Virus record (IMG/VR): IMGVR_UViG_3300024239_000011
Location: 372,001 to 436,000 of that record
DNA length: 64,000 bases
Direction: 5' to 3' (one strand)
Below, in pieces: positions 35,787-64,000 of the stretch (the stretch's first letter is position 1; every line of letters begins with the position of its first letter). Position numbers and translations under genes: made by a program. The notes under the pieces were generated by a model. It was given only the letters and a program-made list of their open reading frames with translations, made no database searches and was not told where the DNA came from.

Positions 35787-38072
35787 TTAGCTAACAGCCT
35801 TGTACTCAACGGTAACAATGGCAGAACCGCCAGCAGTCGGAGCGGTTGCAAAACCACCCAGGCTAACAGCAGCACCGGCAATATCGCTTTCAAAGTCGCC
35901 ATCGATCACATAGGTACCCGTGGAGGTAAGATCGATTTCGCTGTTGGCAGCAATAGTAACGGCACCAGCAGTGATTGCAGCATCCGTGTCGGTGCTGAAT
36001 GCAGAGGTAACCTTTACGATTACACGAGCCGCATAATACTTCTTGGTACCAACCTGCGGGACATTACCAATGGCGAAGGACTGAGCAGTACCATCAGCAG
36101 TGACCACGGTACGAATGGTGAGTTCGTCAGTAGTGGTTGCAATGGCATTGTCAACATACGACTTCGTGGCAACCGAATTGGCGTCGGTAACGACGTAACC
36201 CGATGGGACGAGAATCTGACCAGCGCCCTTCGGTGCCAGTACGATATCAACAGAGCTATCAGTGCCTTCCGCAAGCAGCTTAAGTTCACCACCAGCAGCC
36301 GAGTTCAACATCTTGAAGTAATTGACGGCGCTCGCTACACCATCGATCACCAGAACGTCTTTCTCTGCCGAATCCTGTAACTTCACTACGCCGCCGCCAG
36401 TGCCACCGGCACCACCGCGAACAATAACGTTACCGCTAGTGAAGGAGTTAACACCGTCACCGCCTTCAAGAACGAGCGAACCTGCATCCGCCGCCGAGCT
36501 ATTACCGCCCTTCAGAGTCAGATTGCTGTCATTGTCAGCCTGGATCACACCGTCGCCAGTGTCACCGATGAACACGTTACCGTTGCCCTGCGGTACCAGA
36601 CGAATATCCACGTCACCAGTGGTTGTGGAATTCTTAGCTTCAATACGGAATTCCGACTTAGCACCGGAAGTCGCATGGGTAAACTTAGCGTAAGTATCAA
36701 CGCCATCCACAGTTTCAAAATCTGCGATATGGTTGGCAGCAGTACCGTTACCACGAGCGTAGATTTCAACCTTACCAGATTCGGTAGTGTCGTTGGACAT
36801 AGTACGAACGAAAGTATACGCATCGTCCGACTTGATCTGATATGCACCATCAGTCAAAGCAGTGGTCAACGCAGTGACCTCGGAACGGGTCATCAAAGCG
36901 TTGTCAGAGGTGGAGACATAGCCAGACGGCAGCAATACTTCACCAGTACCCGGATCAAGAATAATGTCGCCAGCAACTTCCGACTTGCTGATACGCAAAT
37001 CGCCAGTAGTGGCGTCAACGTCCAAGGTAGCCTTGTTGGTCGCGGAACCACCAGTGGCTTCCACAACCACATCACCAGTAGCATTGCGCAACGAACCGAG
37101 ATAACCCCAGGCGGCATCGGCGCCCGCACCAGCGGAAACGAGAGTCTGATTTACCAGACCTTCACCCACGGCAACACTTCCGGCAGCGTTGATACGTGCA
37201 GTTACACCATCAACAACAACCTGAAGACCATTGGTAGCGTCAATGGTCAGACCCTTGGTGCTGTCAGCAACAACCTGAAGACCATTAGTGGCGTCAATCG
37301 TCAAAGCCTTGGCCGCATCAGCAACAACGGCAACGCCTGTTGCACCAACCGACAAAGCCTTGGTAGTGTCCACTACTACTTGAAGACCGCCAGTAGTGGT
37401 CAGCCCTTTATCAGCAGCGATATCAAGTTCGAGATCACCACTGGTGAATTTCAAACCGGAGTCGGTAGTAACCAGAGCAACCGCAACCTGCCCACCGGTC
37501 AGTTCGATACCATTACCAGCCGAAAGCTGACCGGCACCAGTGAACTGAGTGAAAGTGAGTTCAGTTGTTCCGATAACGATAGGATCGTTGGTAGCAAGCA
37601 CCCAACCTTCCTGGGCATGCGAACCTTCCTCGATGAAGGTGAACATACCAGCGGTAACTTCACCAGACGGGTTACCGTCCGCATCATCAGCACGACCCCA
37701 TGCATCAGAACCGACAACATAGATACCATTTTCAGTAGCATCAAGCTGCCCAATGACCAAAACTCGGTCACCCACGGTCAAGGTCACACCATCAACAGTC
37801 TGCGTACCAGACAGGGTGATGTCGGACGACGCAAGGACACGAACCGACTTCTTAACATCCAGTCCTGTTGCGACGGAATCGACATACCACTTAGAAGCGG
37901 CAGAATTCGGATCGGCAGGGTTCTGTGCAACCTGAATCTCGGCAAGATCAGTGCCATTCTTGGTAAGCTTAAAACGGTTATTCGCCGCATCCCACTCTAC
38001 GGAACCACCCTTCTTTCCGTATTGGACTGCGGACGCCACTCCGTTCAAGCCAAAATTCTTATGTGTAGCCAT
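35787..38072 (-). CDS. Virion fibre/structural protein
   Basis: Same modules as 32842-35028; 18-aa tandem repeats (VVAD..K.LTIDATNGLQ) near 37200-37420; TAAATA at 38138. Confidence 0.8.
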   Translation of the reverse strand: MATHKNFGLNGVASAVQYGKKGGSVEWDAANNRFKLTKNGTDLAEIQVAQNPADPNSAASKWYVDSVATGLDVKKSVRVLASSDITLSGTQTVDGVTLTVGDRVLVIGQLDATENGIYVVGSDAWGRADDADGNPSGEVTAGMFTFIEEGSHAQEGWVLATNDPIVIGTTELTFTQFTGAGQLSAGNGIELTGGQVAVALVTTDSGLKFTSGDLELDIAADKGLTTTGGLQVVVDTTKALSVGATGVAVVADAAKALTIDATNGLQVVADSTKGLTIDATNGLQVVVDGVTARINAAGSVAVGEGLVNQTLVSAGAGADAAWGYLGSLRNATGDVVVEATGGSATNKATLDVDATTGDLRISKSEVAGDIILDPGTGEVLLPSGYVSTSDNALMTRSEVTALTTALTDGAYQIKSDDAYTFVRTMSNDTTESGKVEIYARGNGTAANHIADFETVDGVDTYAKFTHATSGAKSEFRIEAKNSTTTGDVDIRLVPQGNGNVFIGDTGDGVIQADNDSNLTLKGGNSSAADAGSLVLEGGDGVNSFTSGNVIVRGGAGGTGGGVVKLQDSAEKDVLVIDGVASAVNYFKMLNSAAGGELKLLAEGTDSSVDIVLAPKGAGQILVPSGYVVTDANSVATKSYVDNAIATTTDELTIRTVVTADGTAQSFAIGNVPQVGTKKYYAARVIVKVTSAFSTDTDAAITAGAVTIAANSEIDLTSTGTYVIDGDFESDIAGAAVSLGGFATAPTAGGSAIVTVEYKAVS

Positions 38073-44669: not shown

Positions 44670-46496
44670 TTAATTAGAACCACCACCACTCGTCAATACA
44701 AACACACGAATAAATTCATCCGGTCGTGTGCCATAATTAGACGAATACGCAGTGTATTCACGTGCTTCACCATAGACGTTGATATTAACCGCTTGACCGC
44801 CCTGATACGCCGGTCCTTTTGAAATCGCAATCAAATCCATTTCTTCGGTGTAAGCCATGCGGGTGGTCGTCAACCCAAATGGGAATACCAGAACATATTC
44901 ACCATCATCTGTCGTCACAGGGCTACGCCATGCATTCGGGAAATGATGAATGGAATTTCCTAAATTACCCGACTGATTACTGAGTTCATTTGAATAGACA
45001 ACCCCAGTTACATTCGGATCATATCCAGTACCACCAGACAAAGTTGGCGGTGCTGTTATCTTGTCTGTAGGCGAGGTAACACTAATACTGTATCGGTTAC
45101 CATCAACCCCCTTACTATTGTAGGTAATGGTCAAATAACCATTACCAGAAGTCGGGTCATAGTTGCCATTATACGAAGCCACCTTAATCGCACCCAACGA
45201 GGATGCACGAAGTACGTTGACTACATTATTAAGAGTCTGTTCGACATTTCCCGGCACCACTTTGATCTGGCGATCACCGGGATTACCATCGGTAAAGGTA
45301 TAAGTGACGTTGTTGAGAACGATTGAATCACTAAGAGCCGATGGGTCGGAAGTCGTTGAATATGCCGGTACGCCCTTGAAAGTCACCGTCCCCGTGGCAG
45401 CAACCGCCGAATCTACACCTCCCGCCCAGGGAGTAACCATGATAGTAGCTGCATTAGATGAAGACATCGACAATCCCAAATCAGCAACACGCCCAGGCTT
45501 TGCGGAATACATAAACACACGGGACAAGTTATCCGTGGTTACAGACGCAATCACCCGACCATTGATACGATTGTCCCAGGTATCAGCATTAATAGCATCA
45601 ACCAAATTTTTTGCTAAAGCCACTGGCGTCCCAGTGGTCAATTTATGTTCCCCAGCAAGCAAACCACTGGTCGGGTTAATTACAAACTTTGCGCCATTAA
45701 TTGTTAAATTCCCCGCGTCAATCGATGCAACTCCTGCCGGTGCTTTAAATTCAACATATGCGGTAGCACGAGTGCCAGCAGCGGCCATTTCCGAACCGGT
45801 GGTCGGCACATCGGTGTCTTTTTCACGAACAACAGTATAATACCATTTATCAGAAAGTTCACTTGCACCTACGCGAGGAACAGTATTATGAATGGCAAAT
45901 ACCGGTTGTGTACCAGTAATGAAGGTAGTACCATCACACTTAACCGGACGCTGACAGCACACCAGACCCATATAACGCATATCTTCAATACGCAATTGAT
46001 CCCAAACGATGAGAGCAAAACCACGCGAGGTCTGTGTGTAACGATATGAATACTGATACGATTCAGACATACGAGTTGACGTGATGCTTTCACCACCCTG
46101 AATCAAAACACAACGATGTGAATATGTTGTGTTAATTCCTTCAGCTTCGTTCATAGTCTCGACAGTACCGAGATACATAATCAATTGATTGTTCTGATAC
46201 CCATCAACTATAAACCCAACCCGATACTTTTTCTTATCTTCAACCGGATTTGCCGCATGAGTGGTATTAAGAGGTGATAGCGGATCAACAGTATTACTTG
46301 ATTGAAAAATCACGGTAGTCGCTTCATTAAGGCTAACCGCAGTGGGATCGGAACTACCGGGTTTGGCCTTATAGATCAATTCCCATCCATGATCTTGGAA
46401 ATCCTTGAAAATATTGGATGCGATTGCCTTGGGGTCGAGTGTTGCACCCGACGATACCATCTTGGAAAAATTGTTCCGTTCTACTGTGAAACCCAT
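44670..46496 (-). CDS. Virion structural protein with inserted beta-rich domains
   Basis: CCQRPV, VVREKD, FPFGLTTTRMAYTEEMDLI; TATAAATA at 46531-46538. Confidence 0.75.
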   Translation of the reverse strand: MGFTVERNNFSKMVSSGATLDPKAIASNIFKDFQDHGWELIYKAKPGSSDPTAVSLNEATTVIFQSSNTVDPLSPLNTTHAANPVEDKKKYRVGFIVDGYQNNQLIMYLGTVETMNEAEGINTTYSHRCVLIQGGESITSTRMSESYQYSYRYTQTSRGFALIVWDQLRIEDMRYMGLVCCQRPVKCDGTTFITGTQPVFAIHNTVPRVGASELSDKWYYTVVREKDTDVPTTGSEMAAAGTRATAYVEFKAPAGVASIDAGNLTINGAKFVINPTSGLLAGEHKLTTGTPVALAKNLVDAINADTWDNRINGRVIASVTTDNLSRVFMYSAKPGRVADLGLSMSSSNAATIMVTPWAGGVDSAVAATGTVTFKGVPAYSTTSDPSALSDSIVLNNVTYTFTDGNPGDRQIKVVPGNVEQTLNNVVNVLRASSLGAIKVASYNGNYDPTSGNGYLTITYNSKGVDGNRYSISVTSPTDKITAPPTLSGGTGYDPNVTGVVYSNELSNQSGNLGNSIHHFPNAWRSPVTTDDGEYVLVFPFGLTTTRMAYTEEMDLIAISKGPAYQGGQAVNINVYGEAREYTAYSSNYGTRPDEFIRVFVLTSGGGSN

Positions 46497-47446: not shown

Positions 47447-49645
47447 TTAATTGATCTCCAAACCAGTAATTGCTTGGTTTTTTGCAAGACGGAAACGAAC
47501 CAATATTGCGCTATTGACTGAATTTGACGAGGTTTCCTCACCAAAGAAAGCAATAAAACGTCCAGAAGTTCCGTTAGCTGGGGTACCGAATGCACAACCC
47601 GGAGAATTAACCCCTCGATCAGGAACACCAATACCGTCATAACGCCGATACAAGTCCCACCATCCATTGAGGGTATTATTTAACCCCTGAATACCCGGCA
47701 ACATGACCCACATTCCTGCATAAGTTCCCTCAACATGTATCTTGATGGATGAACATGCACGACGCCGCAACATAAAGGTGGCATATTGAGGTGCATGTGG
47801 TGGGCGCGTAGAAAAATCTGGACCTTCTGGGAGATACTGGGTGTAGTCAGTAAGGTCGTGCTTCAATACACCACCAACAACCGATGCGGCGGCAGAAGAG
47901 ATTTCCCGAGCCGGTTCCCATGGTGCCGACAGTAGCAACCCGATTTCACCGGTACTAACCACTGGTGTGTCTTCATCATGACTTATATTAACACGCATTG
48001 CATGAGCAACGGCATCTGCGGGGATTTCGCCTAATGCTGGGTCAACCTTAACATTCGTTTCTGTAATCACACCACCAAGCCCAACGGCGGGTTCACCCGA
48101 CATAATCAGAAGTTTCTTTGGTGCCACTGCCCATGGACTATTACCAAGCGGCAGCCGAACTCTGGTACGAATTTCCGCCTCCGTATGCACATCACCAGAA
48201 ACCACAAACTCAAGCCCACTTTGGCTGTAAGTAGGCATATGGCTCGGTAGCACAGCGGGGAGATTGTATTGTCCAGGGTCAATAAATACCGGATCACCAA
48301 CTACCGGCTCCGTGCTAATTTCCATAACACCCTTGTCGTAAAACACATTTGTCGAAAGATTGAAACCAGTGACACTTGCCGTTAGCGTTGAATTCTCGGT
48401 GTAATGCGGAATACCACTTGAATGAACAATGTTCGGTAATGAGGGGGCGATGGTATTAAAAGTCGCGGATGGAACCTCGATGACTTCATCCACAACGAAC
48501 AGTACCTCGTTCGTCTCACCCGAGGCAGTATGAAGCATTTTCATGGAGTTCAATCCAGCTTGAACCGTGGTCGCGATTCCCGCAGTCAGCGACTTATGGA
48601 AACCGGGTTTGTCAGCGGGGAAGTCAGGATTATCAATGATAGTAAGTGCGCCATCGGTCGTTACATTATCACCAGACCCAAGTGTAACAACACCCGCAAT
48701 ATTACCATTGATAATTGCTTGAACATCACCTGAATTACCCGGTCCAAAATTAGTAACTGGAAGCGAAGTAACCTCGCCGGATGCAACGGCGGTAACAGGG
48801 GTACCACCAGCAAGTGGGACACTACCAGAATTATTGATAACACCATCACAAATTACAACATTCGCACCATCCAACCCACTGATACTATCCTCAATTACTA
48901 AGGTTTTGGATGATAACGGTGCTGGCGGCGCGGGCACAAGCAGCCCCAGGATTTCGTTTAAGTCATCAAGTGCATCTACAATACGAGTTGCAGCAGTCCA
49001 TGATTGTATAGCCGGTTGACTTCCTTCTACACGACCATTACTCCAAAGCCCATCGGTAGGAATACCAATCATGTCACCGACGCTTGATGGATCACCACTA
49101 TTAGTGCCACCAGAGCCAACTCCCTTGGTGCCAATGTAACGGCACCCCTCAATGTAGATATCCACCACCCCATTTGGTAAATTGTTCGGGAAGTGTAGGA
49201 CACCAGCTTGGTAGTCAAATACCCACTCTTCATTATTAGTCAATGCGTTTAAGACAACCCCGCCAGCAGAAGGAATGCCCTTATAAACCTTTAGCATATA
49301 ACTAGGGTCTACCGATGGCGGAATCCAGTCAGTGATACGGTTGGCCTTTTCCATTGGGTTGCCAGTTGAACTGACCACGGCAATCCATGTCTTATTCCCA
49401 CTGACAGTTGGATCGGCAACACATTTAATCGCCTTCGCCCCTTTCTGAACGACAACAACTGTGGTATCAGTAGCAGGGGCAGCGGTTGGAATTTGATCCG
49501 CTTGTGCCCATACCTGATTACCGAAAACCGGTAACGGCGACCCAATAGATTCGTTAGAACCATCCTTACTCGCGGTCGTCTCGGTGACGCCGTACATGAT
49601 CTTCTTCCAGAGGAAGTCCAGTTTCTTTTGATCAGCAATGGACAT
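47447..49645 (-). CDS. Virion structural protein, KK.DFLWK family member 2
   Basis: MSIADQKKLDFLWKKIMYG; shares C-terminal modules with the next two genes. Confidence 0.8.
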   Translation of the reverse strand: MSIADQKKLDFLWKKIMYGVTETTASKDGSNESIGSPLPVFGNQVWAQADQIPTAAPATDTTVVVVQKGAKAIKCVADPTVSGNKTWIAVVSSTGNPMEKANRITDWIPPSVDPSYMLKVYKGIPSAGGVVLNALTNNEEWVFDYQAGVLHFPNNLPNGVVDIYIEGCRYIGTKGVGSGGTNSGDPSSVGDMIGIPTDGLWSNGRVEGSQPAIQSWTAATRIVDALDDLNEILGLLVPAPPAPLSSKTLVIEDSISGLDGANVVICDGVINNSGSVPLAGGTPVTAVASGEVTSLPVTNFGPGNSGDVQAIINGNIAGVVTLGSGDNVTTDGALTIIDNPDFPADKPGFHKSLTAGIATTVQAGLNSMKMLHTASGETNEVLFVVDEVIEVPSATFNTIAPSLPNIVHSSGIPHYTENSTLTASVTGFNLSTNVFYDKGVMEISTEPVVGDPVFIDPGQYNLPAVLPSHMPTYSQSGLEFVVSGDVHTEAEIRTRVRLPLGNSPWAVAPKKLLIMSGEPAVGLGGVITETNVKVDPALGEIPADAVAHAMRVNISHDEDTPVVSTGEIGLLLSAPWEPAREISSAAASVVGGVLKHDLTDYTQYLPEGPDFSTRPPHAPQYATFMLRRRACSSIKIHVEGTYAGMWVMLPGIQGLNNTLNGWWDLYRRYDGIGVPDRGVNSPGCAFGTPANGTSGRFIAFFGEETSSNSVNSAILVRFRLAKNQAITGLEIN

Positions 49646-49649
49646 TTAC

Positions 49650-51800
49650 TTACACCCCAATGAAGCTCAAACCAGTAATCGCCTTGCCCGCAGTGAGCGA
49701 AAAACGAACCAGAATAATGTTGTTTGTTGAATTTGTACTGGATTGGGTACCGAACGTCACCCGCACCTGTCCGGTGGACCCGGTGGCAACTGCCCCCATG
49801 GCACACCCAGCACCATTAGACCCAACGTCAGGCACGCCAGCACCATCATAAAGCTGTTTAGCTGACCACCAGCCATTCAGCGTATTCTTGGTCGTTATGC
49901 CAGGAAGTTTCACCCATAGCCCATCATAAGTACCAGTTACGTCAATGACAAAACCTGATTGGGCACGACGGCGGAACATGAAAGTTATGTATTGGGTCGC
50001 TGCTCGTCCACTCAGATTCGGTCCAGGGGGCAAATACCCAGTGCTATAATCGGTCGCATCATGTTTTAATATCCCGCCGACAACAACCGCATCCCATGCC
50101 TGTAATGCCGCTGATGAAACCCAATCAGGTGTTATCAAATTAACATCACCAGCCGGGGTATCCGTATTGCCTAAAATAATACGACCCGCATTACCACCAG
50201 TTGGGTTCGTACCCATATTCGTCACCGCAATCGATGTTTCACGGATGCCTGTAGTTGGAGTACCGGTCATTACGTTAACCTTGAGCGACGATGTATTCCA
50301 TTGCCCATCGCCCGCCGGATTACGCCCACGAACGCGCACATTAGCGGTAGTATGTACCGATCCCCCGATAGTGAATACTTGATCGAAGATGTTTTGATTG
50401 GGCAAATCCTTAGTGAATACCGCAGGCATTCCCGCATTACCCGGTCCAATATCCACCTGGGTACCAATGGTCGGGACACTTCCAATTTGGATGTTGCTTT
50501 TTGAAAGATACGTTAACCCAGCCAATTTCGATACAGTAGCTCCAACCTTCAGTGTTGCCCCCGCACCGTAATGCGGAATACTGCTGCTGTATGACAAAGT
50601 ACCAGCGGTTCCCTCTGCCACGGTTAACGCTGTAGTGGACGGAATATCAATACGATCATCATACACAAAGAATACTTCATTCGTGGCGCCACCATCGGTA
50701 TGACTCATGCGGAACTTGTTTAGCCCCGCCGGTATAGATGATGTTATTTTAGCACTCAACGCACGCCAGAACCCAGGTTTATCGGTCGGGTAGTCTATAT
50801 CCGCAGTGACAATAAGGGAGCCATAGGTACCACTTTTGTCCGTATTATCTATAACGACCTTACCACTCTCCGTGCCATTCACCAGGGCAGCTAATGTTCC
50901 GCTAATCCCACTACCAAAACCGGTTAGCGCAGTTGTACTCGCAGTTGCCGCCGCAATACGGTAAATCTTGGTTCCACTTGCAGGACTTCCACCACCAGTA
51001 TTGTCCACCGTGCCTTCTGCAAGCAGGATATTTTCCGAGCCAACTGCATCGGCACCCCCGGTCATCACCAAGGTCAATGTGCTGAGATTTGGTGGTGGGG
51101 AAGGAAGCAACTTTCCAAGTAATTCATTAAGATCATCAAGTGCATCAACAACTTTTGTAGATGAATTCCAGTTTTTAATTGCAGCATTTTGATCCAACGA
51201 CCCATCAGTAGGTGTACCTAGGGTAATACCATCAGCCGTACCAGACCCCCCAGTACCTCCCGCTGAAATACCACGTCGTCCAACGTACTTATAACCAATG
51301 ACATATACATCAGATGTTGCCAATGCTGATGGGATATTGTTTGGAAAATGCAAAACGCCTGCTGCATAGTCAAACACCCACTCTTCGTTATTAGTCAATT
51401 GATTTAGCTGTTTTCCACCGGCATTTGGATCACCCGCATACACCTTGATCTGGTAGCTGGGATGAATAATAGGGGGAACCCAATCCATATGACGATTGGT
51501 TGCAAGAAAAGGACTTGTTGTGGCATCAATAACGGTAATCCATGTTCGGCGCTCGGTTACGGTGGAATCGACTGCACACTTAACTGCCACCGACTGCCCG
51601 AAGAATTGCACTACCCCCTGGGTAGCACCGGGCGCGGGTGATGGAATTTGATCACTTTCAGACCATAACTGACTTTGCAAGACGACCGGTGCCGATGATA
51701 TGAACTCGTTCGGCGCCGCTTTATTCACGTCCGTCTCAGTACGGGAGAAAATAGTTCGCTTCCAAAGGAAATCTACTTTCTTATCGGTATTGATTGCCAT
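49650..51800 (-). CDS. Virion structural protein, KK.DFLWK family member 3
   Basis: MAINTDKKVDFLWKRTIFS; DALDDLNE, SSIPHY, NGWW, ILVRF. Confidence 0.8.
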   Translation of the reverse strand: MAINTDKKVDFLWKRTIFSRTETDVNKAAPNEFISSAPVVLQSQLWSESDQIPSPAPGATQGVVQFFGQSVAVKCAVDSTVTERRTWITVIDATTSPFLATNRHMDWVPPIIHPSYQIKVYAGDPNAGGKQLNQLTNNEEWVFDYAAGVLHFPNNIPSALATSDVYVIGYKYVGRRGISAGGTGGSGTADGITLGTPTDGSLDQNAAIKNWNSSTKVVDALDDLNELLGKLLPSPPPNLSTLTLVMTGGADAVGSENILLAEGTVDNTGGGSPASGTKIYRIAAATASTTALTGFGSGISGTLAALVNGTESGKVVIDNTDKSGTYGSLIVTADIDYPTDKPGFWRALSAKITSSIPAGLNKFRMSHTDGGATNEVFFVYDDRIDIPSTTALTVAEGTAGTLSYSSSIPHYGAGATLKVGATVSKLAGLTYLSKSNIQIGSVPTIGTQVDIGPGNAGMPAVFTKDLPNQNIFDQVFTIGGSVHTTANVRVRGRNPAGDGQWNTSSLKVNVMTGTPTTGIRETSIAVTNMGTNPTGGNAGRIILGNTDTPAGDVNLITPDWVSSAALQAWDAVVVGGILKHDATDYSTGYLPPGPNLSGRAATQYITFMFRRRAQSGFVIDVTGTYDGLWVKLPGITTKNTLNGWWSAKQLYDGAGVPDVGSNGAGCAMGAVATGSTGQVRVTFGTQSSTNSTNNIILVRFSLTAGKAITGLSFIGV

Positions 51801-51802
51801 CC

Positions 51803-54568
51803 TTAATTCCCCCTGAACACAAGACCGCTAATTGCATCGTTTCCGGTCAACTTAAATCGTACCAACAGAATATTGTTCGTAGAAAAATGAGTATTTGCCT
51901 GACCAAACGTTACTCCAAATGTGCCGCTATGACCATTCATTTTTCCAATACTAGGATCGCCACACCCAGGAGAAGTTCCTGGCATACCCGGAACCCCACC
52001 AACTGCATCGAAATCCATCATCGCATCCCACCATCCGTTGGGAGCATCAGACAAATCAAGCAAGTCGCCGGTAAACGGATCGGTCAAACCATACATTTTC
52101 AACCAGCACCCAGAGTAGGTACCAGTAATATCTACCAACATTGAGGTGACAGCCGAACGGCGAACCATAAACGTTGTATATTGTGTCGCATTCTGCCCAC
52201 TCAAATCCGGACCAACCGGGAGATACCCATCGGAATAGTTGGTATGGTCACAGCGCAACACACCACCAACTATTGCCGCATCCCAGGTGTTGAGTGCTGC
52301 CGATGCATTCCAATCACCGGTCAGCAACCCGCTTTTATCGTCTGCTGGCGTATCCCCATTACCCATGGTGACACGGACCCCGAAATCTGGCGCATTAGTG
52401 GGTTTTACCCCAAGATTCACCAACGAAATCCCATTTTCAATCATAGGACCATTCACCCCTGACGGTGGCGATCCCGCCATTACATTAAACCCAATAGTAT
52501 CTTCCGACCAATCACCATACCCATTAGTGTTTTTTCCACGTGTACGCAGCTTAGATGTCGTATGGATACTTCCACCAATAATAAATGGCACATCAGATGC
52601 GGTAATGACAGTGCCGCTCGGGGATGCCGGAATACCATATTCGCCCGCATTAATAACAACTGGTATACCAATCTGTGGATTGGTTCCTGCTTCAATCATT
52701 GGCGTGGCATAGGCGCCACCATGGGTGACCATGTTGCTATAGCTCGCAGTCACCTTCAAGGTCGAGGTGGACGCATAGTGCGGTACCGAGCTTGAATAAA
52801 CAATGACTTGATTACCTTCAGTAATCTGCCGATTCTCAAACACCGGTAACCCCGAAATAGAATCTTGATCATTGTCCACAATGGTACCAGACCCTTGTGA
52901 AGTCGCCAGGGTAGCATTGACGGGATCACTCAAGATAATCTTGAACGCCTCATTGCCTTCGACCAGCAAATCGTCTGTAGTGTTGATCTGAATTTTTTTG
53001 ACCGTCTCACCGGGCTGAAATTGAAGGATACCACTCTTAGCAGTGTAATCCTGCCCACCCACCGCAGTTCCGTCCTGGGTTTGATAGGACACTGACACAA
53101 TTACGGTAGTCGGAACCGACAGATTAACGGTAAATTCAATCACACCACCTTCGGTTGCGCTTGCATTTCCAATACTGATCGCGGGTACTACCACGGAAGC
53201 ATCTTCCAAAAGGAAGAACACGCGGTTGGTTGATCCGGTTTGCGTATGAACCAATTGCACACTGTTGATACCCGTATTCAACGTAGGCATCGTGATACGA
53301 GCGTCTATAGAGCGCCACAGACAGGCAGGACCGCCCACTGGGTAAATGCTATCAGCCAACACTTCCAGGGCATCGTAGGTGCCTGTATTGTCCGCTGCGT
53401 TAAGGGCAACCGACCCGGCTGCCTGTCCGTTTACCATCGCTACCAGAGAACCGGTATTCCCCGACCCAAACGCGGTGACAATATTGGTTTTCACGGGAGT
53501 CTGGTTGACTACATAGATCGGCTGACCCGCAGTTGGACCAGAACCCGTATGATCAATCGTTCCCGGAGGGACGATCCCCATTTGCCCGTCAATTACTTGA
53601 AGAGTCTTTGATGACAAAGCCGGTGGTTGATCCGGAAGAATGACGCCGAGTAATTTATTCAGTTGATCCAATGCATCAGCAATAGTAGTGTTTTCATTCC
53701 AACCAGTGATTGCGGGTGGCTTACACCCCTCCGCGCGTGGATCATCAAAATGACCGGTGGTTGGTGTTCCAATAGTATTACCCGGTGCAGCTACTTTAGC
53801 ATCAATAGTCACCGTATCGCCCGTAGTTGTAATAATGGCGTTCGGACCCGGTTTCAAAGTCTTAAAACGGAATGTGTTGTCTACTCGATGCGAATAAACA
53901 CTAGTACCATTCCCAATATTGATAATATCAATATGATCTATAGGAGCGGATGGTGCAGAAATACCAATCTCATCACCCAAATCCATAACTAATGTGCCAT
54001 TCAAACCCTTTATGGTCTTGAACATTAACTCGTTGCCAACCTGCCCACCAAATACACCAGCACCGGTCCCGATATTGATTGCGGAAACCGGTGGGGCGCT
54101 CTGAGTAGTCGTCGGACCAGCCGAGATCACCAGTGAACAACCGTTGTCAATGATGGTTACGTTGTTCCCCGCATACAGGCGCTTAAAGCGAAGGATGCCG
54201 TTTTTTTCTCCATGATAGATGGGTTTGCCTTCTTCGTCGTCACCCAGGTTGATGGCGCCGACAATCGATGGACTATCATTCAACGCTGCAATTACAAGTG
54301 CGTCAGCTTCTTCCGTGATGCCGATCCCGGTACCCGCCTTTAGACGACGAAACTGAAATTCTGGACCGACCCGCTGTTTAAACACAGTAGAGCCTTCCAT
54401 ACCCAAATTCACACCAATGGACGCATCGACGGTTTCAATAATGATTTTATCTGCACATTGACGTAGCGAGACATTATTCCCGCCCTTAAGAGTACGAAAC
54501 CGAAGGGTTTCTCCCTCTAATCCGGCATAAATTTCAATAGCATTGCCAATATTCTGCCCATCGGTCAT
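51803..54568 (-). CDS. Virion structural protein with about five N-terminal repeats and an inserted Calx-beta domain
   Basis: N.G....VF......F.F(R/K).L..G repeats; EG...FTVNLS...VSY.T.DGTA..G.DY...SG.L.F.PGET.K Calx-beta. Confidence 0.8.
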   Translation of the reverse strand: MTDGQNIGNAIEIYAGLEGETLRFRTLKGGNNVSLRQCADKIIIETVDASIGVNLGMEGSTVFKQRVGPEFQFRRLKAGTGIGITEEADALVIAALNDSPSIVGAINLGDDEEGKPIYHGEKNGILRFKRLYAGNNVTIIDNGCSLVISAGPTTTQSAPPVSAINIGTGAGVFGGQVGNELMFKTIKGLNGTLVMDLGDEIGISAPSAPIDHIDIINIGNGTSVYSHRVDNTFRFKTLKPGPNAIITTTGDTVTIDAKVAAPGNTIGTPTTGHFDDPRAEGCKPPAITGWNENTTIADALDQLNKLLGVILPDQPPALSSKTLQVIDGQMGIVPPGTIDHTGSGPTAGQPIYVVNQTPVKTNIVTAFGSGNTGSLVAMVNGQAAGSVALNAADNTGTYDALEVLADSIYPVGGPACLWRSIDARITMPTLNTGINSVQLVHTQTGSTNRVFFLLEDASVVVPAISIGNASATEGGVIEFTVNLSVPTTVIVSVSYQTQDGTAVGGQDYTAKSGILQFQPGETVKKIQINTTDDLLVEGNEAFKIILSDPVNATLATSQGSGTIVDNDQDSISGLPVFENRQITEGNQVIVYSSSVPHYASTSTLKVTASYSNMVTHGGAYATPMIEAGTNPQIGIPVVINAGEYGIPASPSGTVITASDVPFIIGGSIHTTSKLRTRGKNTNGYGDWSEDTIGFNVMAGSPPSGVNGPMIENGISLVNLGVKPTNAPDFGVRVTMGNGDTPADDKSGLLTGDWNASAALNTWDAAIVGGVLRCDHTNYSDGYLPVGPDLSGQNATQYTTFMVRRSAVTSMLVDITGTYSGCWLKMYGLTDPFTGDLLDLSDAPNGWWDAMMDFDAVGGVPGMPGTSPGCGDPSIGKMNGHSGTFGVTFGQANTHFSTNNILLVRFKLTGNDAISGLVFRGN

Positions 54569-60790: not shown

Positions 60791-60999
60791 GTCAGTGCCA
60801 GTTCGTCCCGGATTTCCAAAGCACGTTTTTCTATCCATGGATGCAGTATATCTTTGGCTTTACGGGCATCATTCACCCATAGTGCGTTCATAACCTGTTC
60901 CAGCGGTTCCTTGGTGTCATCCGGAAACGGCGCAGGCAGATCGCCGGAAGTCCACCACATCCAGCTTTTCTTGAATCGTGCCTTGATTTGCTCAAACAT
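60787..60999 (-). CDS. Hypothetical protein
   Basis: Start MFEQIK overlaps the clpA stop. Confidence 0.55.
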   Translation of the reverse strand: MFEQIKARFKKSWMWWTSGDLPAPFPDDTKEPLEQVMNALWVNDARKAKDILHPWIEKRALEIRDELALT

Positions 61000-63274
61000 C
61001 GTACTTGAACTCCAACTCATTATTGCTTACGCCGATGACGACTGTTCCGCCCTTAACCAGCTTACCGAACAACATTTCACGGGAGAGCGGCTTTTTCACA
61101 TACTGCTGGATTACGCGCGCCAACGGTCGCGCACCCATCTTCGGATCATAGCCTTCCCGCGCCAACCACCGCTTGGCAGGCATGTTCACCACGACCTTAA
61201 CCCGGTTCTCCTGGCTCAAATCGTTTAGTTCGTTGATGAACTTGGTAACGACCTTCAACATGTCAGGTTCGGTCAGCGCCCGGTACTTAACAATGGCATC
61301 CAAGCGATTACGGAATTCCGGCTTGAACCGTTCGTTGATCACTTTGTCTTCTGCGCCGCTCCGGTCATCGCTGGCAGTGAAACCAATAGAGTTCTTTTGT
61401 AGCTCCGTGGCGCCCGCATTCGAGGTCATGATCAGATAGACGTTTCGGAAATCGACTTCCTTCCCGCTACCGCTGGTCAGCTTACCGGTGTCCATGACCT
61501 GTAGGAAAAGATCATAGATATCCGGATGCGCCTTCTCGATTTCATCAAGCAACAGCACGCAATGCGGCGTCTTTTCAATCATGTTGATCAGTACACCGGA
61601 CCCCGCATTCCCATCCTCGTACCCAACGTAGCCAGGGCGCCCACCGATCAACGTGGCAGCCGCATGTTTTTCCTGATACTCGGACATGTTCAAGCGCACC
61701 AATTCGATCCCGAGGGTCGCGGCAAGCTGAACTGCTGTCTCGGTCTTGCCAACGCCCGTTGGACCGGCGAAAAGGTAGCATCCAAGCGGCTTGCGCTTGT
61801 CCCGAAGCCCGGCGCGGCTCTGGTACACAGCATCAATCAAGGTGTCAATAGCACGGTCCTGCCCGAACACCACCCCTTTCAAATCCTTTTCAAGACGTGA
61901 AAGACGCTTAATGTCGTCGTCCTTAACCGATTTTGGCGGAATTTTGGCAATGCGAGCAACCTGCTGCTCGATTTCAAAAACTCCAATAATCTTCTTCCGC
62001 TTGGTAGGAGGTTTGACCCGTTCCGCCGCCCCCGCTGCATCCATCACATCAATTGCCTTGTCAGGTAAGAAGCGCCCATGGACATACCGAACCGTCAAAT
62101 CTACCGCAGCCTGTAAAGCTTCATTCTGATATACAACCCCGTGATAACCCTCATAATGATCTTTTAGACCCTGAAGAATTTGTACCGCATCGGTCGAGCT
62201 TGGTTCAAACACATCCACCCGATGGAAACAACGATTGAATGTTCGATCTTTCTGAAAATACTTACGATCATCCTGATAAGTCGTGCTACCGATGGTCTGA
62301 ATTTCACCCCGATTCAAATACGGCGCTAGAATATTGGCAATGGATGGTCCACCCTCACCACCCGACACACTGGTCATGTGAATATTGTCGATCACAAGAA
62401 CCGCATGCGGCTTAGTCAGGAGAGCATTGATCACCAACTTCAGGCGTTCTTCAAATTCACCTCGGAATTTAGCGCCTGCGATCAACGACGGAAGGTCAAG
62501 CTGGTATAGCACCGCATCTTTTATGGTATCCGGAACATCCCCATTCACAATCTTCTTGGCAATACCCTCAAGGATCGCAGTCTTCCCAACACCAGCTTCC
62601 CCCAACAATAATGCGCTGTTCTTGCGGCGACGCGCCAGGATGCTAATTACCGTTGCTATTTCGTTCTCACGACCAACCAACGGGTCAATTTTTCCCGCCT
62701 TGGCAAGATCATTGAGATTGATACACAGCGCCTTGAGAATTTGATCAGTCTTGCTTTCTGCGGCTGGTTTTTGAGTAGGAGACGGAAGACGACCATATTC
62801 CGAATTTACGGTATCAGTTGGTACCGCACTCAGCGAACTATCAGCAAGATATTGTATTAAACGAAAATGATCCAAACCGAATGCAGCACATATAGTTGTC
62901 GAATGACAATCGTCTTCGGTAAGAATAGCAACCAAAATATCTTTACATCGAAGGGTATCCCGCCCAGATGACAGACATTGCACCACGGTACGATGCTTCA
63001 CCCGTTCTAGTGCGGGAGTTTGACCCGGTATATTTTTAATTACTCTTGTGGGAATAACACCAGAATTCAAATATTCATCAAGTACATCCCGCATACCATC
63101 AATATCAATTCCTAGATCATCTAAAATATCGATAATGTCGTCCTCTTCTAAAAGAGAACGGAGTACATGTTCAGTAGTAACGATTTCATGACGCAACCGC
63201 TGTGCAATATTATAAGCTCTCTGAATTGGAGCAACAACCAGTTGATGGTTTACTTCTATACTAGAAACAGACAT
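60992..63274 (-). CDS. clpA: ClpA-like AAA+ unfoldase
   Basis: Clp N-domain, IDPLVGRE, GEAGVGKT, GPTGVGKT, GYVG, LLLDEIEK, IGF loop, GAR; no ClpB middle domain. Confidence 0.93.
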   Translation of the reverse strand: MSVSSIEVNHQLVVAPIQRAYNIAQRLRHEIVTTEHVLRSLLEEDDIIDILDDLGIDIDGMRDVLDEYLNSGVIPTRVIKNIPGQTPALERVKHRTVVQCLSSGRDTLRCKDILVAILTEDDCHSTTICAAFGLDHFRLIQYLADSSLSAVPTDTVNSEYGRLPSPTQKPAAESKTDQILKALCINLNDLAKAGKIDPLVGRENEIATVISILARRRKNSALLLGEAGVGKTAILEGIAKKIVNGDVPDTIKDAVLYQLDLPSLIAGAKFRGEFEERLKLVINALLTKPHAVLVIDNIHMTSVSGGEGGPSIANILAPYLNRGEIQTIGSTTYQDDRKYFQKDRTFNRCFHRVDVFEPSSTDAVQILQGLKDHYEGYHGVVYQNEALQAAVDLTVRYVHGRFLPDKAIDVMDAAGAAERVKPPTKRKKIIGVFEIEQQVARIAKIPPKSVKDDDIKRLSRLEKDLKGVVFGQDRAIDTLIDAVYQSRAGLRDKRKPLGCYLFAGPTGVGKTETAVQLAATLGIELVRLNMSEYQEKHAAATLIGGRPGYVGYEDGNAGSGVLINMIEKTPHCVLLLDEIEKAHPDIYDLFLQVMDTGKLTSGSGKEVDFRNVYLIMTSNAGATELQKNSIGFTASDDRSGAEDKVINERFKPEFRNRLDAIVKYRALTEPDMLKVVTKFINELNDLSQENRVKVVVNMPAKRWLAREGYDPKMGARPLARVIQQYVKKPLSREMLFGKLVKGGTVVIGVSNNELEFKYDV

Positions 63275-63341: not shown

Positions 63342-63848
63342 TTAGGGCAGCGAATTCTTGATGCTATTGACATCCCGGATTGCCTGCTCCGTGATGGAGC
63401 GGCAGTCGCCCACGTTAGCGCCGTCGTAGCGCACCATTCGCACATCGCGAATGGCAACGTTGACGATCATAACGATCTCGCGCTCGATCTCATGGACAGA
63501 AGCGTGGTCGATGTAGCCGACGCCACCCGTGGGATTGTCGTAGTCCACCCCACGACCGGTCGGGGAGAAGGTTTGATGCCGGGCGTAAAGGTGCGCCAAC
63601 GCATCCTGGCTGGTGTTGTGCAAGTCCATCAACATGTCTTGACACGACCGATTATTCTCATAAAGCGCGGGTTGTCCATTCCCGCCCATGACCCCGGTGC
63701 GCTTGGCTTCCCAGCAGGCGCGGTCGTAGATATCGCAGGCAGCATGTGCCGGGCTGGTAGACAGGATCAGAGCAGATGCGGCAACCAGAGCCGTCGCCGC
63801 AGCGAGGATCACCAGACGATAGTTGGTCATGGCAGAAACGCGGGTCAT
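63342..63848 (-). CDS. Exported hypothetical protein
   Basis: Signal peptide ending AHA; four Cys; SD AGGAGG; TTGACA-N17-TAGAAT at 63876-63904. Confidence 0.7.
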   Translation of the reverse strand: MTRVSAMTNYRLVILAAATALVAASALILSTSPAHAACDIYDRACWEAKRTGVMGGNGQPALYENNRSCQDMLMDLHNTSQDALAHLYARHQTFSPTGRGVDYDNPTGGVGYIDHASVHEIEREIVMIVNVAIRDVRMVRYDGANVGDCRSITEQAIRDVNSIKNSLP

Positions 63849-64000
63849 GGTGTCCTCCTTCAAACCTATAATTGCATTCTACCCGTTTGAAGTGGTCATG
63901 TCAACCATGTCTACGAATGATTGGGACGTATAAGTTCTCGGTACTTCCTAAGAACTAACTTTTGTTCATCAGTTAGGTTGGTTGGCACTGTAATTTCAAT

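What the first reader, a model, noticed from the sequence alone, without database searches (positions are those of the whole stretch)
60992..63274. Phage ClpA with a disabled first ATPase ring but intact D2 motor and ClpP-docking loop
Seen: D1 Walker B is IDNIH (62378-62392) instead of IDEIH. The arginine-finger segment is FNRCF instead of LxRRF, and the pore loop is KFRG. D1 Walker A, all D2 motifs (GPTGVGKT, GYVG, DEIEK, GAR) and the IGF loop (~61380) are intact. The N-domain is AT-rich and divergent. Established: loss of the Walker B Glu blocks hydrolysis but not ATP binding, and D2 is the main motor. Inference: a retargeted unfoldase that uses host ClpP, or a subunit that poisons or reprogrammes host ClpA hexamers.
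Basis: partly seen in the sequence, partly recalled or inferred. Interest (0 to 1): 0.6.

Follow-up and report, generated by a model that had tools for sequence, protein, structure and literature searches.

The report
Huge-phage ClpA with dead first ring
A 543-kb phage carries the ClpA protein-unfolding motor typical of its relatives, but here the first of its two ATP-burning rings has lost its catalytic residues; the second ring, the protease-docking loop and a phage-encoded ClpP protease are intact.

Summary
The 760-aa ORF at 60992-63274 (-) aligns with E. coli ClpA end to end. Its D1 Walker B Glu is Asn (IDNIH, 62378-62392). The second D1 arginine finger is Cys (NRCF). D1 Walker A, every D2 motif and the IGF loop are intact. 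The same DNA occurs in at least two other assemblies, so it is not a sequencing error.

Neither change is seen in 199 close ClpA homologues, 80 of them from viral contigs, nor in six cultured jumbo-phage ClpAs. The syntenic orthologue (60% identity) keeps IDEIH and NRRF. Among 150 diverse representatives, 3 lack the Glu and none lacks the Arg. Changes unique to this protein cluster in the Walker B-to-Arg-finger stretch of D1, while D1 as a whole is only mildly accelerated.

KFRG is an ordinary pore-loop variant. The "uses host ClpP" idea overlooks the phage's own intact ClpP, 64 kb away. The gene belongs to a known DnaJ-ClpA module of Atu_ph07- and PA5oct-like jumbo phages.

Most likely D1 binds ATP without hydrolysing it and serves as an assembly and grip ring, while D2 drives a ClpP-coupled unfoldase. 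Poisoning of host ClpA is unlikely. This is a new variant of a known kind, of moderate interest.

The parts
60992..63274 (-). ClpA-like double-ring AAA+ unfoldase gene, 760 aa (P0001)
   Evidence: Pfam finds Clp_N, AAA, AAA_lid_9, AAA_2 and ClpB_D2-small. TIGR02639 ClpA scores 834 bits, below the 993 cut-off. It aligns with E. coli ClpA over residues 16-758 at E 1.8e-198.
62849..63229 (-). N-domain (aa 16-142), AT-rich and fast-evolving
   Evidence: Pfam Clp_N covers aa 20-69. It aligns to the E. coli ClpA N-domain structures at E about 9e-9. For codons 1-170, GC is 0.40 and GC3 is 0.24. Identity to the orthologue P0003 is 40%.
62579..62602 (-). D1 Walker A GEAGVGKT (aa 225-232), intact
   Evidence: The identical motif is the commonest form among homologues.
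62459..62473 (-). D1 pore-1 loop AKFRG (aa 268-272), an ordinary variant
   Evidence: [TSA]KFRG occurs in 25 of 199 other close homologues. Phosso has AKFRG.
62378..62392 (-). D1 Walker B IDNIH (aa 295-299). The catalytic Glu, E. coli E286, is replaced by Asn297 (AAT, 62384-62386).
   Evidence: Glu is invariant in 199 other homologues and in 6 cultured phage ClpAs.
62324..62326 (-). Ala317 replaces a Lys (E. coli K308) that is invariant in the close set. It lies in the helix after the D1 pore-2 loop.
   Evidence: The role of this Lys was not established here.
62225..62239 (-). D1 arginine-finger segment FNRCF (aa 346-350). R348 (E. coli R339) is kept; Cys349 (TGT, 62228-62230) replaces R340.
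   Evidence: RRF is invariant in 199 close plus 150 diverse homologues. R339-R340 are described as the D1 Arg fingers in bioRxiv 10.1101/820209.
61742..61765 (-). D2 Walker A GPTGVGKT (aa 504-511), intact
61622..61633 (-). D2 pore-1 loop GYVG (aa 548-551), followed by a 4-residue insertion (..DGNAGSG..) typical of the huge-phage clade
61532..61549 (-). D2 Walker B LDEIEK (aa 576-581), intact
61379..61387 (-). ClpP-docking tripeptide IGF (aa 630-632)
   Evidence: It aligns with E. coli I617-G618-L619. IGF is the majority form among homologues.
61298..61318 (-). D2 arginine-finger motif EFRNRLD (aa 653-659), intact
   Evidence: 195 of 200 sequences are identical here.
61127..61135 (-). D2 sensor-2 GAR (aa 714-716), intact
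   Evidence: GARP in 200 of 200.
63342..63863 (-). Upstream ORF of unknown function (173 aa from TTG; called as 168 aa elsewhere), lying between DnaJ and ClpA. An ORF sits in the same position in the orthologous locus.
   Evidence: No Pfam hit.
63876..63904 (-). Sigma-70-like promoter match (TTGACA, 17 nt, TAGAAT; 11 of 12) just downstream of the DnaJ stop and upstream of ORF 63342-63863 and ClpA
   Evidence: This is a consensus match only. No terminator-like site lies between it and ClpA.
63911..64000 (-). 3' end of a class-B DnaJ gene (J domain with HPD, G/F region, DnaJ_C; 294 aa). The rest lies beyond the window end.
   Evidence: Position derived from L085 4480-5364. The same DnaJ-ClpA neighbourhood occurs in Atu_ph07, Phosso, PA5oct and the P0003 contig.

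Best explanation
This is the ClpA orthologue of the conserved DnaJ-ClpA module found in Atu_ph07- and PA5oct-like jumbo phages. In this one lineage the D1 ring has lost ATP hydrolysis: the Walker B Glu is Asn, the second Arg finger is Cys, and further changes lie in the Walker B-to-Arg-finger segment. D1 keeps what it needs to bind ATP (Walker A Lys/Thr, Walker B Asp, sensor-1) and its overall fold. Inferred mechanism: D1 binds ATP and holds it, serving as a static assembly and substrate-gripping ring, while the fully conserved D2 ring does all the mechanical work. Through its IGF loops the hexamer docks on ClpP, most simply the phage's own intact ClpP, and possibly host ClpP too. The result is a D2-driven ClpAP protease active during infection. 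By analogy with E286Q ClpA, it would be slower and more stall-prone on very stable substrates. Shown here: the sequence features, their uniqueness, their reproducibility, the synteny and the presence of a phage ClpP. Inferred: loss of hydrolysis, retained ATP binding, the ClpP partnership, and any biological role. Whether the loss is adaptive or merely tolerated is open.
For: The sequence and alignment to E. coli ClpA show E286->N and R340->C with all other motifs intact. Both residues are invariant in 199 close homologues and 6 cultured jumbo-phage ClpAs. P0001-only changes at columns that are at least 95% conserved number 9 of 67 in D1 against 1 of 73 in D2 (Fisher p 0.007). Of those in D1, 8 of 23 fall in aa 294-350 against 1 of 44 elsewhere (p 0.0005). 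So the loss is focused on the hydrolysis and trans-activation elements, not the P-loop. D1 as a whole is not decaying. Its branch since the split from P0003 is 2.55x the sister's, against 2.02x for D2, and AF2 predicts a normal alpha/beta D1 fold. The DNA is identical in independent assemblies. The syntenic orthologue P0003 keeps IDEIH and NRRF. The phage ClpP has an intact triad, and the only AAA_2 protein in the genome is this one, so there is no phage ClpX. Related huge phages with ClpA also carry ClpP. The ClpP pocket residues listed for E. coli are conserved or conservatively replaced in the phage ClpP, by my reading of the sequence with the numbering. The complex test of D2 with two copies of phage ClpP scored 0.47 against a best control of 0.00. 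That is 'weak support': the mark was reached by 51 of 78 solved complexes and 2 of 108 mismatched pairs, but scores of 0.60 or under came from only 5 of the 78 solved complexes and all 4 mismatches that passed. The runs agree in at least 80% of contacts and partner pLDDT is at least 76. The score may come from memory of solved ClpAP structures. Literature: E286Q allows ATP binding but slows hydrolysis dramatically, D2 gives about 83% of ATPase, and D1-dead ClpA still degrades with ClpP (PMC7568338). D1-dead ClpAP stalls and back-slips (bioRxiv 10.1101/585554).
Against: The ClpP gene is 64 kb from ClpA and not in the same operon. The complex score is only weak. Asn in place of Glu has not itself been tested in ClpA, and residual or compensated hydrolysis cannot be excluded. 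The protein falls below the NCBIfam ClpA equivalog cut-off (834 against 993 bits). The gene lies among virion genes and next to DnaJ, which would also fit a ClpP-independent chaperone role. All known copies are identical, so purifying selection on this allele cannot be measured.
Confidence: 0.6

Rival explanations
1. ClpP-independent chaperone or translocase. The protein works with the neighbouring phage DnaJ (and host DnaK) in folding, disassembly or virion assembly of the very large phage proteome. The IGF loop is a retained ancestral feature, and D1 hydrolysis is dispensable for this holding or remodelling role.
For: DnaJ-ClpA adjacency is conserved in Atu_ph07, Phosso, PA5oct, the P0003 contig and this phage. 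Structural genes lie nearby. Authors of jumbo-phage surveys have suggested roles in virion assembly or as a translocase (PMC7824862; PMC6102473).
Against: The IGF tripeptide is strictly kept here and in the closest phage relatives, while more distant phage ClpAs have let it drift (GAP32 LGM, Vibrio IGV, SCTP-2 IGY). The phage keeps an intact ClpP with no other phage-encoded partner. There is no M-domain of the ClpB type for DnaK coupling, since the alignment with ClpA is colinear. No phage DnaK or GroEL was found.
Confidence: 0.2
2. The D1-dead subunit co-assembles with host ClpA and poisons or reprogrammes it, or it acts only through host ClpP as a retargeted unfoldase.
For: D1-dead, D2-active and IGF-intact is the pattern one would design for a substrate-engaging variant. 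The N-domain is divergent, so substrate or adaptor choice probably differs. The phage has no ClpS.
Against: Engineered ClpA hexamers with alternating or fully dead D1 modules remain functional, so D1-dead subunits are not poisons (PMC7568338). Identity to the best bacterial ClpAs is only about 47%, which makes mixed hexamers doubtful. The phage has its own intact ClpP. Orthologues with active D1 occupy the same locus in related phages, so the module's role does not depend on a dead D1.
Confidence: 0.08
3. Early gene decay. The phage no longer needs ClpA, and the D1 hits are the first steps to a pseudogene.
For: P0001 evolves about twice as fast as its sister in both ATPase domains. Several invariant residues are lost in one region.
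Against: The 760-codon frame is intact. D2 deviates at 1 of 73 conserved columns, and every D2 motif, the Walker A motifs and the IGF loop are kept. The damage is confined to one functional segment rather than spread out. The D1 fold is predicted to be normal.
Confidence: 0.08
4. Sequencing or assembly error created the Asn and Cys codons.
For: None was found. Read-level inspection was not possible.
Against: The 2283-nt gene sequence is identical in separate assemblies from different samples. Glu->Asn needs two base changes. Ten further substitutions accompany it in the same segment and domain.
Confidence: 0.01

Closest known systems
E. coli ClpA (ClpAP protease; PDB 7uiv, 6w1z, 1ksf)
   Same: The alignment is colinear over residues 16-758 (E 1.8e-198). 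The architecture is the same: N-domain, D1, D2 and D2-small, with no M-domain. D1 Walker A, all D2 motifs and the ClpP-docking IG[L/F] loop are conserved.
   Different: The E286 equivalent is Asn, the R340 equivalent is Cys and the K308 equivalent is Ala. There is a 4-residue insertion after the D2 GYVG loop. The N-domain is only weakly similar. The protein scores below the NCBIfam equivalog cut-offs. No ClpS is encoded by the phage.
Jumbo-phage ClpA of the DnaJ-ClpA module (Agrobacterium phage Atu_ph07 gp292/gp293, Sinorhizobium phage Phosso, Pseudomonas phage PA5oct)
   Same: Identity is 42-50%. These proteins share the D2 insertion (GYVG..DGxAGxG), the IGF loop and an adjacent upstream DnaJ. 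Metagenomic huge-phage ClpAs that carry the same insertion form a UFBoot-100 clade with P0001. Atu_ph07 also encodes ClpP (PMC6102473).
   Different: All of them keep FIDEIH and RRF in D1. Only this phage has IDNIH and RCF.
Laboratory ClpA E286Q / E286A (D1 Walker B) variants
   Same: The same residue is affected and the same outcome is expected: ATP binds D1 but is barely hydrolysed, and D2 still powers ClpP-dependent degradation (PMC7568338; bioRxiv 10.1101/585554).
   Different: This is a natural allele carrying Asn rather than Gln or Ala, plus loss of one Arg finger and further changes in the same segment. No activity data exist for it.
Type II AAA+ proteins with a naturally non-catalytic ring (Pex1/Pex6 D1; NSF D2, the latter from general knowledge)
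   Same: One ring lacks a canonical Walker B and Arg fingers and serves structural or assembly roles, while the other ring is the motor (Pex1/6: PMC4490564).
   Different: These are different families and cellular roles, and their degenerate rings are ancient and poorly conserved. Here the loss is recent, being absent in a 60%-identical orthologue, and D1 is otherwise well conserved.
Sporadic bacterial ClpA homologues lacking the D1 Walker B Glu (P0335 FIDGIH, P0314 FIDDMH, P0353 CIEDIH)
   Same: The same catalytic position has been lost naturally. This is seen in 3 of 150 diverse representatives.
   Different: All three keep RRF. P0335 is an N-domain-less second paralogue beside a canonical clpS-clpA pair in a bacterial contig, and P0353 sits beside clpS. 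The contexts of P0335 and P0353 look bacterial, not phage.

Membership tests
ClpA (class I Hsp100/Clp unfoldase, TIGR02639) | Two AAA+ modules in one chain: a classic-clade D1 with AAA_lid_9 and an HCLR-clade D2 (AAA_2) with ClpB_D2-small | tested here: met
   Pfam: AAA_2 at 496-661 (E 4e-51), AAA_lid_9 at 360-463, ClpB_D2-small at 667-747, AAA and AAA_16 over D1.
ClpA (class I Hsp100/Clp unfoldase, TIGR02639) | Clp_N amino-terminal domain | tested here: met
   Clp_N at 20-69 scores 40.9 bits against a cut-off of 20.7. Residues 16-142 align to E. coli ClpA N-domain structures at E about 9e-9. The AF2 model is helical over 11-149.
ClpA (class I Hsp100/Clp unfoldase, TIGR02639) | No coiled-coil M-domain, which separates ClpA from ClpB, ClpC and ClpE | tested here: met
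   A single colinear alignment to E. coli ClpA (758 aa) covers 16-758 with no insert. ClpB and ClpC match only as two separate stretches.
ClpA (class I Hsp100/Clp unfoldase, TIGR02639) | ClpP-docking IG[FL] loop in D2 | tested here: met
   IGF at aa 630-632 aligns with E. coli I617-G618-L619.
ClpA (class I Hsp100/Clp unfoldase, TIGR02639) | Score above the curated equivalog cut-off | tested here: not met
   TIGR02639 scores 834.1 bits against a cut-off of 993.15. NF008263 scores 745.8 against 1350. This is a divergent phage lineage of ClpA rather than a bacterial equivalog.
ClpA (class I Hsp100/Clp unfoldase, TIGR02639) | Catalytically competent D1 site (Walker B Glu and trans Arg fingers) | tested here: not met
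   E286->N and R340->C. Both are invariant in 199 close homologues.
ClpA (class I Hsp100/Clp unfoldase, TIGR02639) | Catalytically competent D2 site (Walker A and B, sensor-1 Asn, Arg finger, sensor-2 Arg) | tested here: met
   GPTGVGKT, LDEIEK, TSNAG, EFRNRLD and GARP all match the consensus.
ClpA (class I Hsp100/Clp unfoldase, TIGR02639) | Forms ATP-dependent hexamers and activates ClpP | not testable with these tools
   Only a weak computational hint exists: D2 with two copies of phage ClpP scored 0.47 against a best control of 0.00, rated 'weak support'.
Jumbo-phage DnaJ-ClpA module (Atu_ph07 / PA5oct type) | ClpA gene immediately or nearly downstream of a phage DnaJ gene | tested here: met
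   Here the order is DnaJ (294 aa), a 168-aa ORF, then ClpA. Atu_ph07 and PA5oct have DnaJ directly upstream. Phosso has DnaJ, deformylase, ClpA. The P0003 contig has DnaJ, a 165-aa ORF, ClpA.
Jumbo-phage DnaJ-ClpA module (Atu_ph07 / PA5oct type) | Membership of the phage ClpA clade and its sequence signature (insertion after the D2 GYVG) | tested here: met
   A clade of P0001, P0003 and the huge-phage contig proteins has UFBoot 100 in the D1 and D2 trees. The insertion is shared with Atu_ph07, Phosso and PA5oct.
Jumbo-phage DnaJ-ClpA module (Atu_ph07 / PA5oct type) | Phage-encoded ClpP elsewhere in the genome | tested here: met
   One ClpP (PF00574, 267 bits) at G000:C1:368680-369219. ClpP is present in 4 of 5 related viral records that carry ClpA. 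Atu_ph07 gp676 is a ClpP.

The most novel reading that the evidence does not exclude
The D1 ring has been converted by selection into a permanently ATP-loaded scaffold. That would give the phage a hyper-stable ClpA hexamer that out-competes host ClpX and ClpA for ClpP (phage and host) and, through its divergent N-domain, re-routes proteolysis toward host defence or regulatory proteins. It would be a natural 'D1-locked' unfoldase acting as a takeover device, and not merely a tolerated loss.
Probability: 0.1. Interest if true: 0.6.

Novelty: new variant of a known kind. Interest (0 to 1): 0.35.

Why it matters
ClpA is a textbook double-ring unfoldase, and the division of labour between D1 and D2 has been worked out almost entirely with engineered Walker B mutants. 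Here nature has made the D1-dead version recently. An active-D1 orthologue 60% identical sits in the same gene neighbourhood of a related phage, and the phage's own ClpP is available as a likely partner. That provides a matched natural pair for two questions: what D1 hydrolysis is really needed for in vivo, and what a phage-encoded ClpAP does during infection. The role of ClpA and ClpP in jumbo phages is still only guessed at in the literature. The practical payoff is modest. The predicted behaviour follows from known mutants, and sporadic bacterial homologues also lack the Glu.

Tried and rejected
I relied instead on identical DNA in independent assemblies.

Nucleotide search of the phage collection found nothing. 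A protein-level search was needed.

Recurrence in other phage ClpAs was rejected: 0 of 80 IMG/VR loci and 0 of 6 cultured phages.

Sequencing error was rejected (see the rival explanations).

Whole-D1 decay was rejected. Per-domain trees show only a modest extra acceleration of D1 (2.55x against 2.02x for D2).

Domain chimerism from a distant donor was tested as an explanation for the GC3 steps. It is not supported at protein level: P0001 and P0003 are sisters in the N, D1 and D2 trees with UFBoot 93, 100 and 100.

Phage ClpS, ClpX or a second AAA_2 protein, DnaK, GroEL and Lon were all searched for in the 543-kb record and not found.

The complex-prediction job gave only 'weak support': 0.47 against a best control of 0.00. 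I do not take it as proof of binding.

Host identification was not achieved. The phage ClpP is only 66-70% identical to alphaproteobacterial ClpPs, so it is not a recent capture.

Two paper searches failed on term-format rules.
Full report
**What is there.** The window is bases 372001-436000 of a 543,035-bp IMG/VR virus record that CheckV rates complete. It carries tail-sheath, virion and DNA-ligase genes. The flagged ORF (60992-63274, minus strand) encodes 760 aa with no stop. Pfam finds Clp_N, D1 AAA with AAA_lid_9, D2 AAA_2 and ClpB_D2-small. HMMER aligns residues 16-758 colinearly with E. coli ClpA (7uiv, E 1.8e-198), with no M-domain. The best NCBIfam model is ClpA (TIGR02639, 834 bits), but the score is under the 993 cut-off. 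This is a divergent ClpA.

**The observation.**
- IDNIH lies at 62392-62378, with AAT (Asn297) pairing with E. coli E286.
- NRCF pairs with A-R339-R340-F, so the first Arg is kept and the second is Cys349 (TGT, 62230-62228). R339-R340 are the D1 trans-acting Arg fingers in the ClpAP cryo-EM study (bioRxiv 10.1101/820209).
- D1 Walker A, D1 sensor-1, every D2 motif and IGF (61379-61387) match the consensus.
- The N-domain is AT-rich (GC 0.40, GC3 0.24) and divergent.
- KFRG, however, is an ordinary variant. It occurs in 25 of 199 close homologues, and AKFRG is found in phage Phosso.

**Not an error, and not chance.**
- The exact protein is called on 5 contigs.
- ClpA DNA from a Logan assembly of SRR7690231 and from a JGI 3300034072 contig has 0 differences over 2283 nt, although flanking genes differ in length.
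- A cluster mate differs only by V3D.
- Relative to the orthologue's GAA, Glu->Asn needs two base changes.
- In a MAFFT alignment of 199 other homologues (119 database proteins and 80 IMG/VR loci), the Walker B Glu and both Arg are invariant.
- Six cultured jumbo-phage ClpAs (Atu_ph07, Phosso, PA5oct, Vibrio 2.275.O, GAP32, SCTP-2) all have IDE[IA]H and RRF.
- In 150 diverse 50%-identity representatives, 3 lack the Glu (D, G, or a swapped ED) and none lacks an Arg.
- The two that I checked lie in bacterial-looking contexts. One is an N-domain-less second paralogue beside clpS-clpA and a ClpP-like gene.

**Where the change happened.**
- The closest relative, P0003 (60% identity, on a 251-kb contig), sits in the same gene order: OMP-barrel, spanin, DnaJ, a roughly 165-aa ORF, then ClpA. 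It keeps IDEIH and NRRF.
- P0001 and P0003 are sisters in separate N, D1 and D2 trees (UFBoot 93, 100, 100). They sit inside a UFBoot-100 clade of huge-phage ClpAs.
- So the loss is recent and specific to this lineage.

**How the changes are distributed.**
- I counted positions where at least 95% of the other sequences and the sister agree but P0001 differs.
- There are 9 such positions among 67 conserved columns in D1, and 1 among 73 in D2 (p 0.007).
- Within D1, 8 of 23 conserved columns in aa 294-350 are hit, against 1 of 44 elsewhere (p 0.0005).
- That stretch runs from Walker B to the Arg finger. It includes F294V, E297N, A304S, K317A, E335D, A345T, L346F and R349C.
- Yet D1's overall branch is only modestly more accelerated than D2's (2.55x against 2.02x the sister's), and AF2 predicts the normal strand and helix order.
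- This pattern reads as lost constraint on hydrolysis and inter-subunit activation, with retained constraint on fold and nucleotide binding.

**Partners and context.**
- The phage encodes its own ClpP (195 aa, PF00574 at 267 bits, G000:C1:368680-369219), about 64 kb from ClpA.
- By my reading of the sequence, Ser99, the His of MVHQP and the Asp of DRD are present. The IGL-pocket residues listed for E. coli are identical or conservatively replaced, using the numbering.
- This ClpP is 66-70% identical to alphaproteobacterial ClpPs, so it is not a fresh capture.
- No ClpS, no second AAA_2 protein (hence no ClpX), no DnaK, no GroEL and no Lon were found in the record.
- Four of five related viral records that carry ClpA also carry ClpP.
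- A class-B DnaJ lies two genes upstream. The DnaJ-ClpA pairing recurs in Atu_ph07, Phosso and PA5oct.
- The Atu_ph07 paper had already noted ClpA gp292, DnaJ gp293, a ClpP, and that ClpA is conserved in Rak2-like phages (PMC6102473). A jumbo-phage survey also lists ClpA, ClpX and ClpP (PMC7824862).
- A complex test of D2 (aa 441-760) with two copies of phage ClpP scored 0.47, with a best control of 0.00. The tool rates this 'weak support'. The mark was reached by 51 of 78 solved complexes and 2 of 108 mismatched pairs, but scores of 0.60 or under came from only 5 of the solved ones and from all 4 mismatches that passed. The runs agree in at least 80% of contacts, and partner pLDDT is at least 76. 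The score may reflect memory of solved ClpAP structures.

**Mechanism.**
- Established knowledge: E286Q lets D1 bind ATP but nearly stops hydrolysis. D2 supplies about 83% of ATPase and is the principal unfoldase. D1-dead ClpA still degrades substrates with ClpP, and rings with alternating dead modules still work (PMC7568338). D1-dead ClpAP stalls and back-slips on hard substrates (bioRxiv 10.1101/585554).
- Inference: this protein's D1 is an ATP-binding, non-hydrolysing assembly and grip ring, and D2 is the sole motor. The hexamer docks via IGF on ClpP, most simply the phage's own.
- I put about 0.85 on loss of D1 hydrolysis, about 0.65 on ClpP coupling, and 0.6 on the combined statement.
- Whether the loss is adaptive or merely tolerated cannot be decided from sequence.

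**Rivals.**
- A ClpP-independent chaperone role with DnaJ, or in virion assembly: 0.2.
These are weakened by the phage ClpP, by only about 47% identity to bacterial ClpAs, and by the tolerance of ClpA to dead D1 modules.
- Early pseudogenisation: 0.08. This is weakened by the pristine D2 and the intact frame.
- Sequencing error: about 0.01.

**Comparison and novelty.**
- It works like E286Q ClpA and, more loosely, like type II AAA+ proteins with a structural ring, such as Pex1/6 D1 (PMC4490564).
- It is a member of the known jumbo-phage ClpA lineage.
- It fails two ClpA tests: the curated score cut-off and D1 catalytic competence.
- I rate it a new variant of a known kind, with interest 0.35. 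The outcome is predictable from lab mutants, and rare bacterial homologues also lack the Glu. Its value is as a natural D1-dead and D1-active orthologue pair with a cognate phage ClpP.

**Unexplained.**
- The gene's synonymous composition changes in steps at the domain boundaries. GC3 is 0.20-0.35 in the N-domain, 0.33-0.58 in D1 and 0.63-0.75 in D2, while GC at codon positions 1 and 2 stays flat.
- This is the largest within-gene GC3 range of 58 long ORFs in the genome (0.44 against a median of 0.10).
- The protein trees give no sign of a foreign domain.

**Limits.** The host is unknown.

Noticed in passing
window 60992-63274 (-): Synonymous composition changes in steps within the ClpA gene. 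GC3 is about 0.2-0.35 in the N-domain, 0.33-0.58 in D1 (dipping at codons 301-360, where the unique substitutions cluster) and 0.63-0.75 in D2, while GC at codon positions 1 and 2 stays flat. This is the largest within-gene GC3 range of 58 long ORFs in the 543-kb genome. The protein trees nevertheless make all three domains sister to the same orthologue.
   Followed up: partly
G000:C1:368680-369219 (-), about 2.8 kb before the window start; locus L002 1492-2079: A phage-encoded bona fide ClpP (195 aa, no propeptide, Ser/His/Asp present by my reading). It sits next to a 430-aa DUF2201_N metallopeptidase and VWA-like protein (L002 2185-3477).
   Followed up: yes
window 63911-64000 (-) and beyond the window end; L085 4480-5364: A class-B DnaJ (HPD J-domain, G/F region, DnaJ_C, no zinc finger) lies two genes upstream of ClpA. 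The DnaJ-ClpA neighbourhood is conserved in Atu_ph07, Phosso (with a peptide deformylase between), PA5oct and the P0003 contig. No DnaK or GroEL was found in this phage.
   Followed up: yes
window 61592-61621 (-), aa 552-561: A four-residue insertion after the D2 GYVG pore loop (GYVGYEDGNAGSG). It is shared by the huge-phage ClpA clade (P0003-P0007, Atu_ph07, Phosso, PA5oct) and is absent from the bacterial ClpAs in the alignment. AF2 gives it low confidence, consistent with a loop.
   Followed up: partly
L099 6001-8466 (JGI 3300039191 contig, bacterial-looking): A second ClpA paralogue (821 aa, no Clp_N hit, D1 Walker B FIDGIH) lies directly downstream of a canonical clpS-clpA pair and near a 277-aa ClpP-like gene. 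This looks like an independent natural case of a D1-degenerate ClpA.
   Followed up: partly
window 47447-54568 (-): Three tandem paralogues (732, 716 and 921 aa) all match phrog_8578 (unknown function, E down to 1e-158). The first two also match phrog_9417 at their N-termini.
   Followed up: no
window 32842-35028 (-) and 35787-38072 (-): Two paralogous proteins of about 730-760 aa share an N-terminal module that hits head-decoration, virion-structural and tail-fibre PHROGs. A tail-sheath-like protein is at 44670-46496, and an ATP-dependent DNA ligase (817 aa) is at 28045-30498.
   Followed up: no
protein-collection records for P0001 and the phage ClpP: The identical ClpA and ClpP are both recorded on a contig of 869,618 bp in another assembly, whereas the IMG/VR record is 543,035 bp and rated complete. 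This could be a concatemer, a misassembly, a larger genome or an integrated form. I did not examine it.
   Followed up: no
L085 567-1828 and 3278-3631 (upstream of the window end): Upstream neighbours include an OMP beta-barrel protein, an ART-PolyVal ADP-ribosyltransferase-like protein and a T4-type spanin. The OMP-barrel and spanin positions are conserved in the P0003 contig.
   Followed up: no
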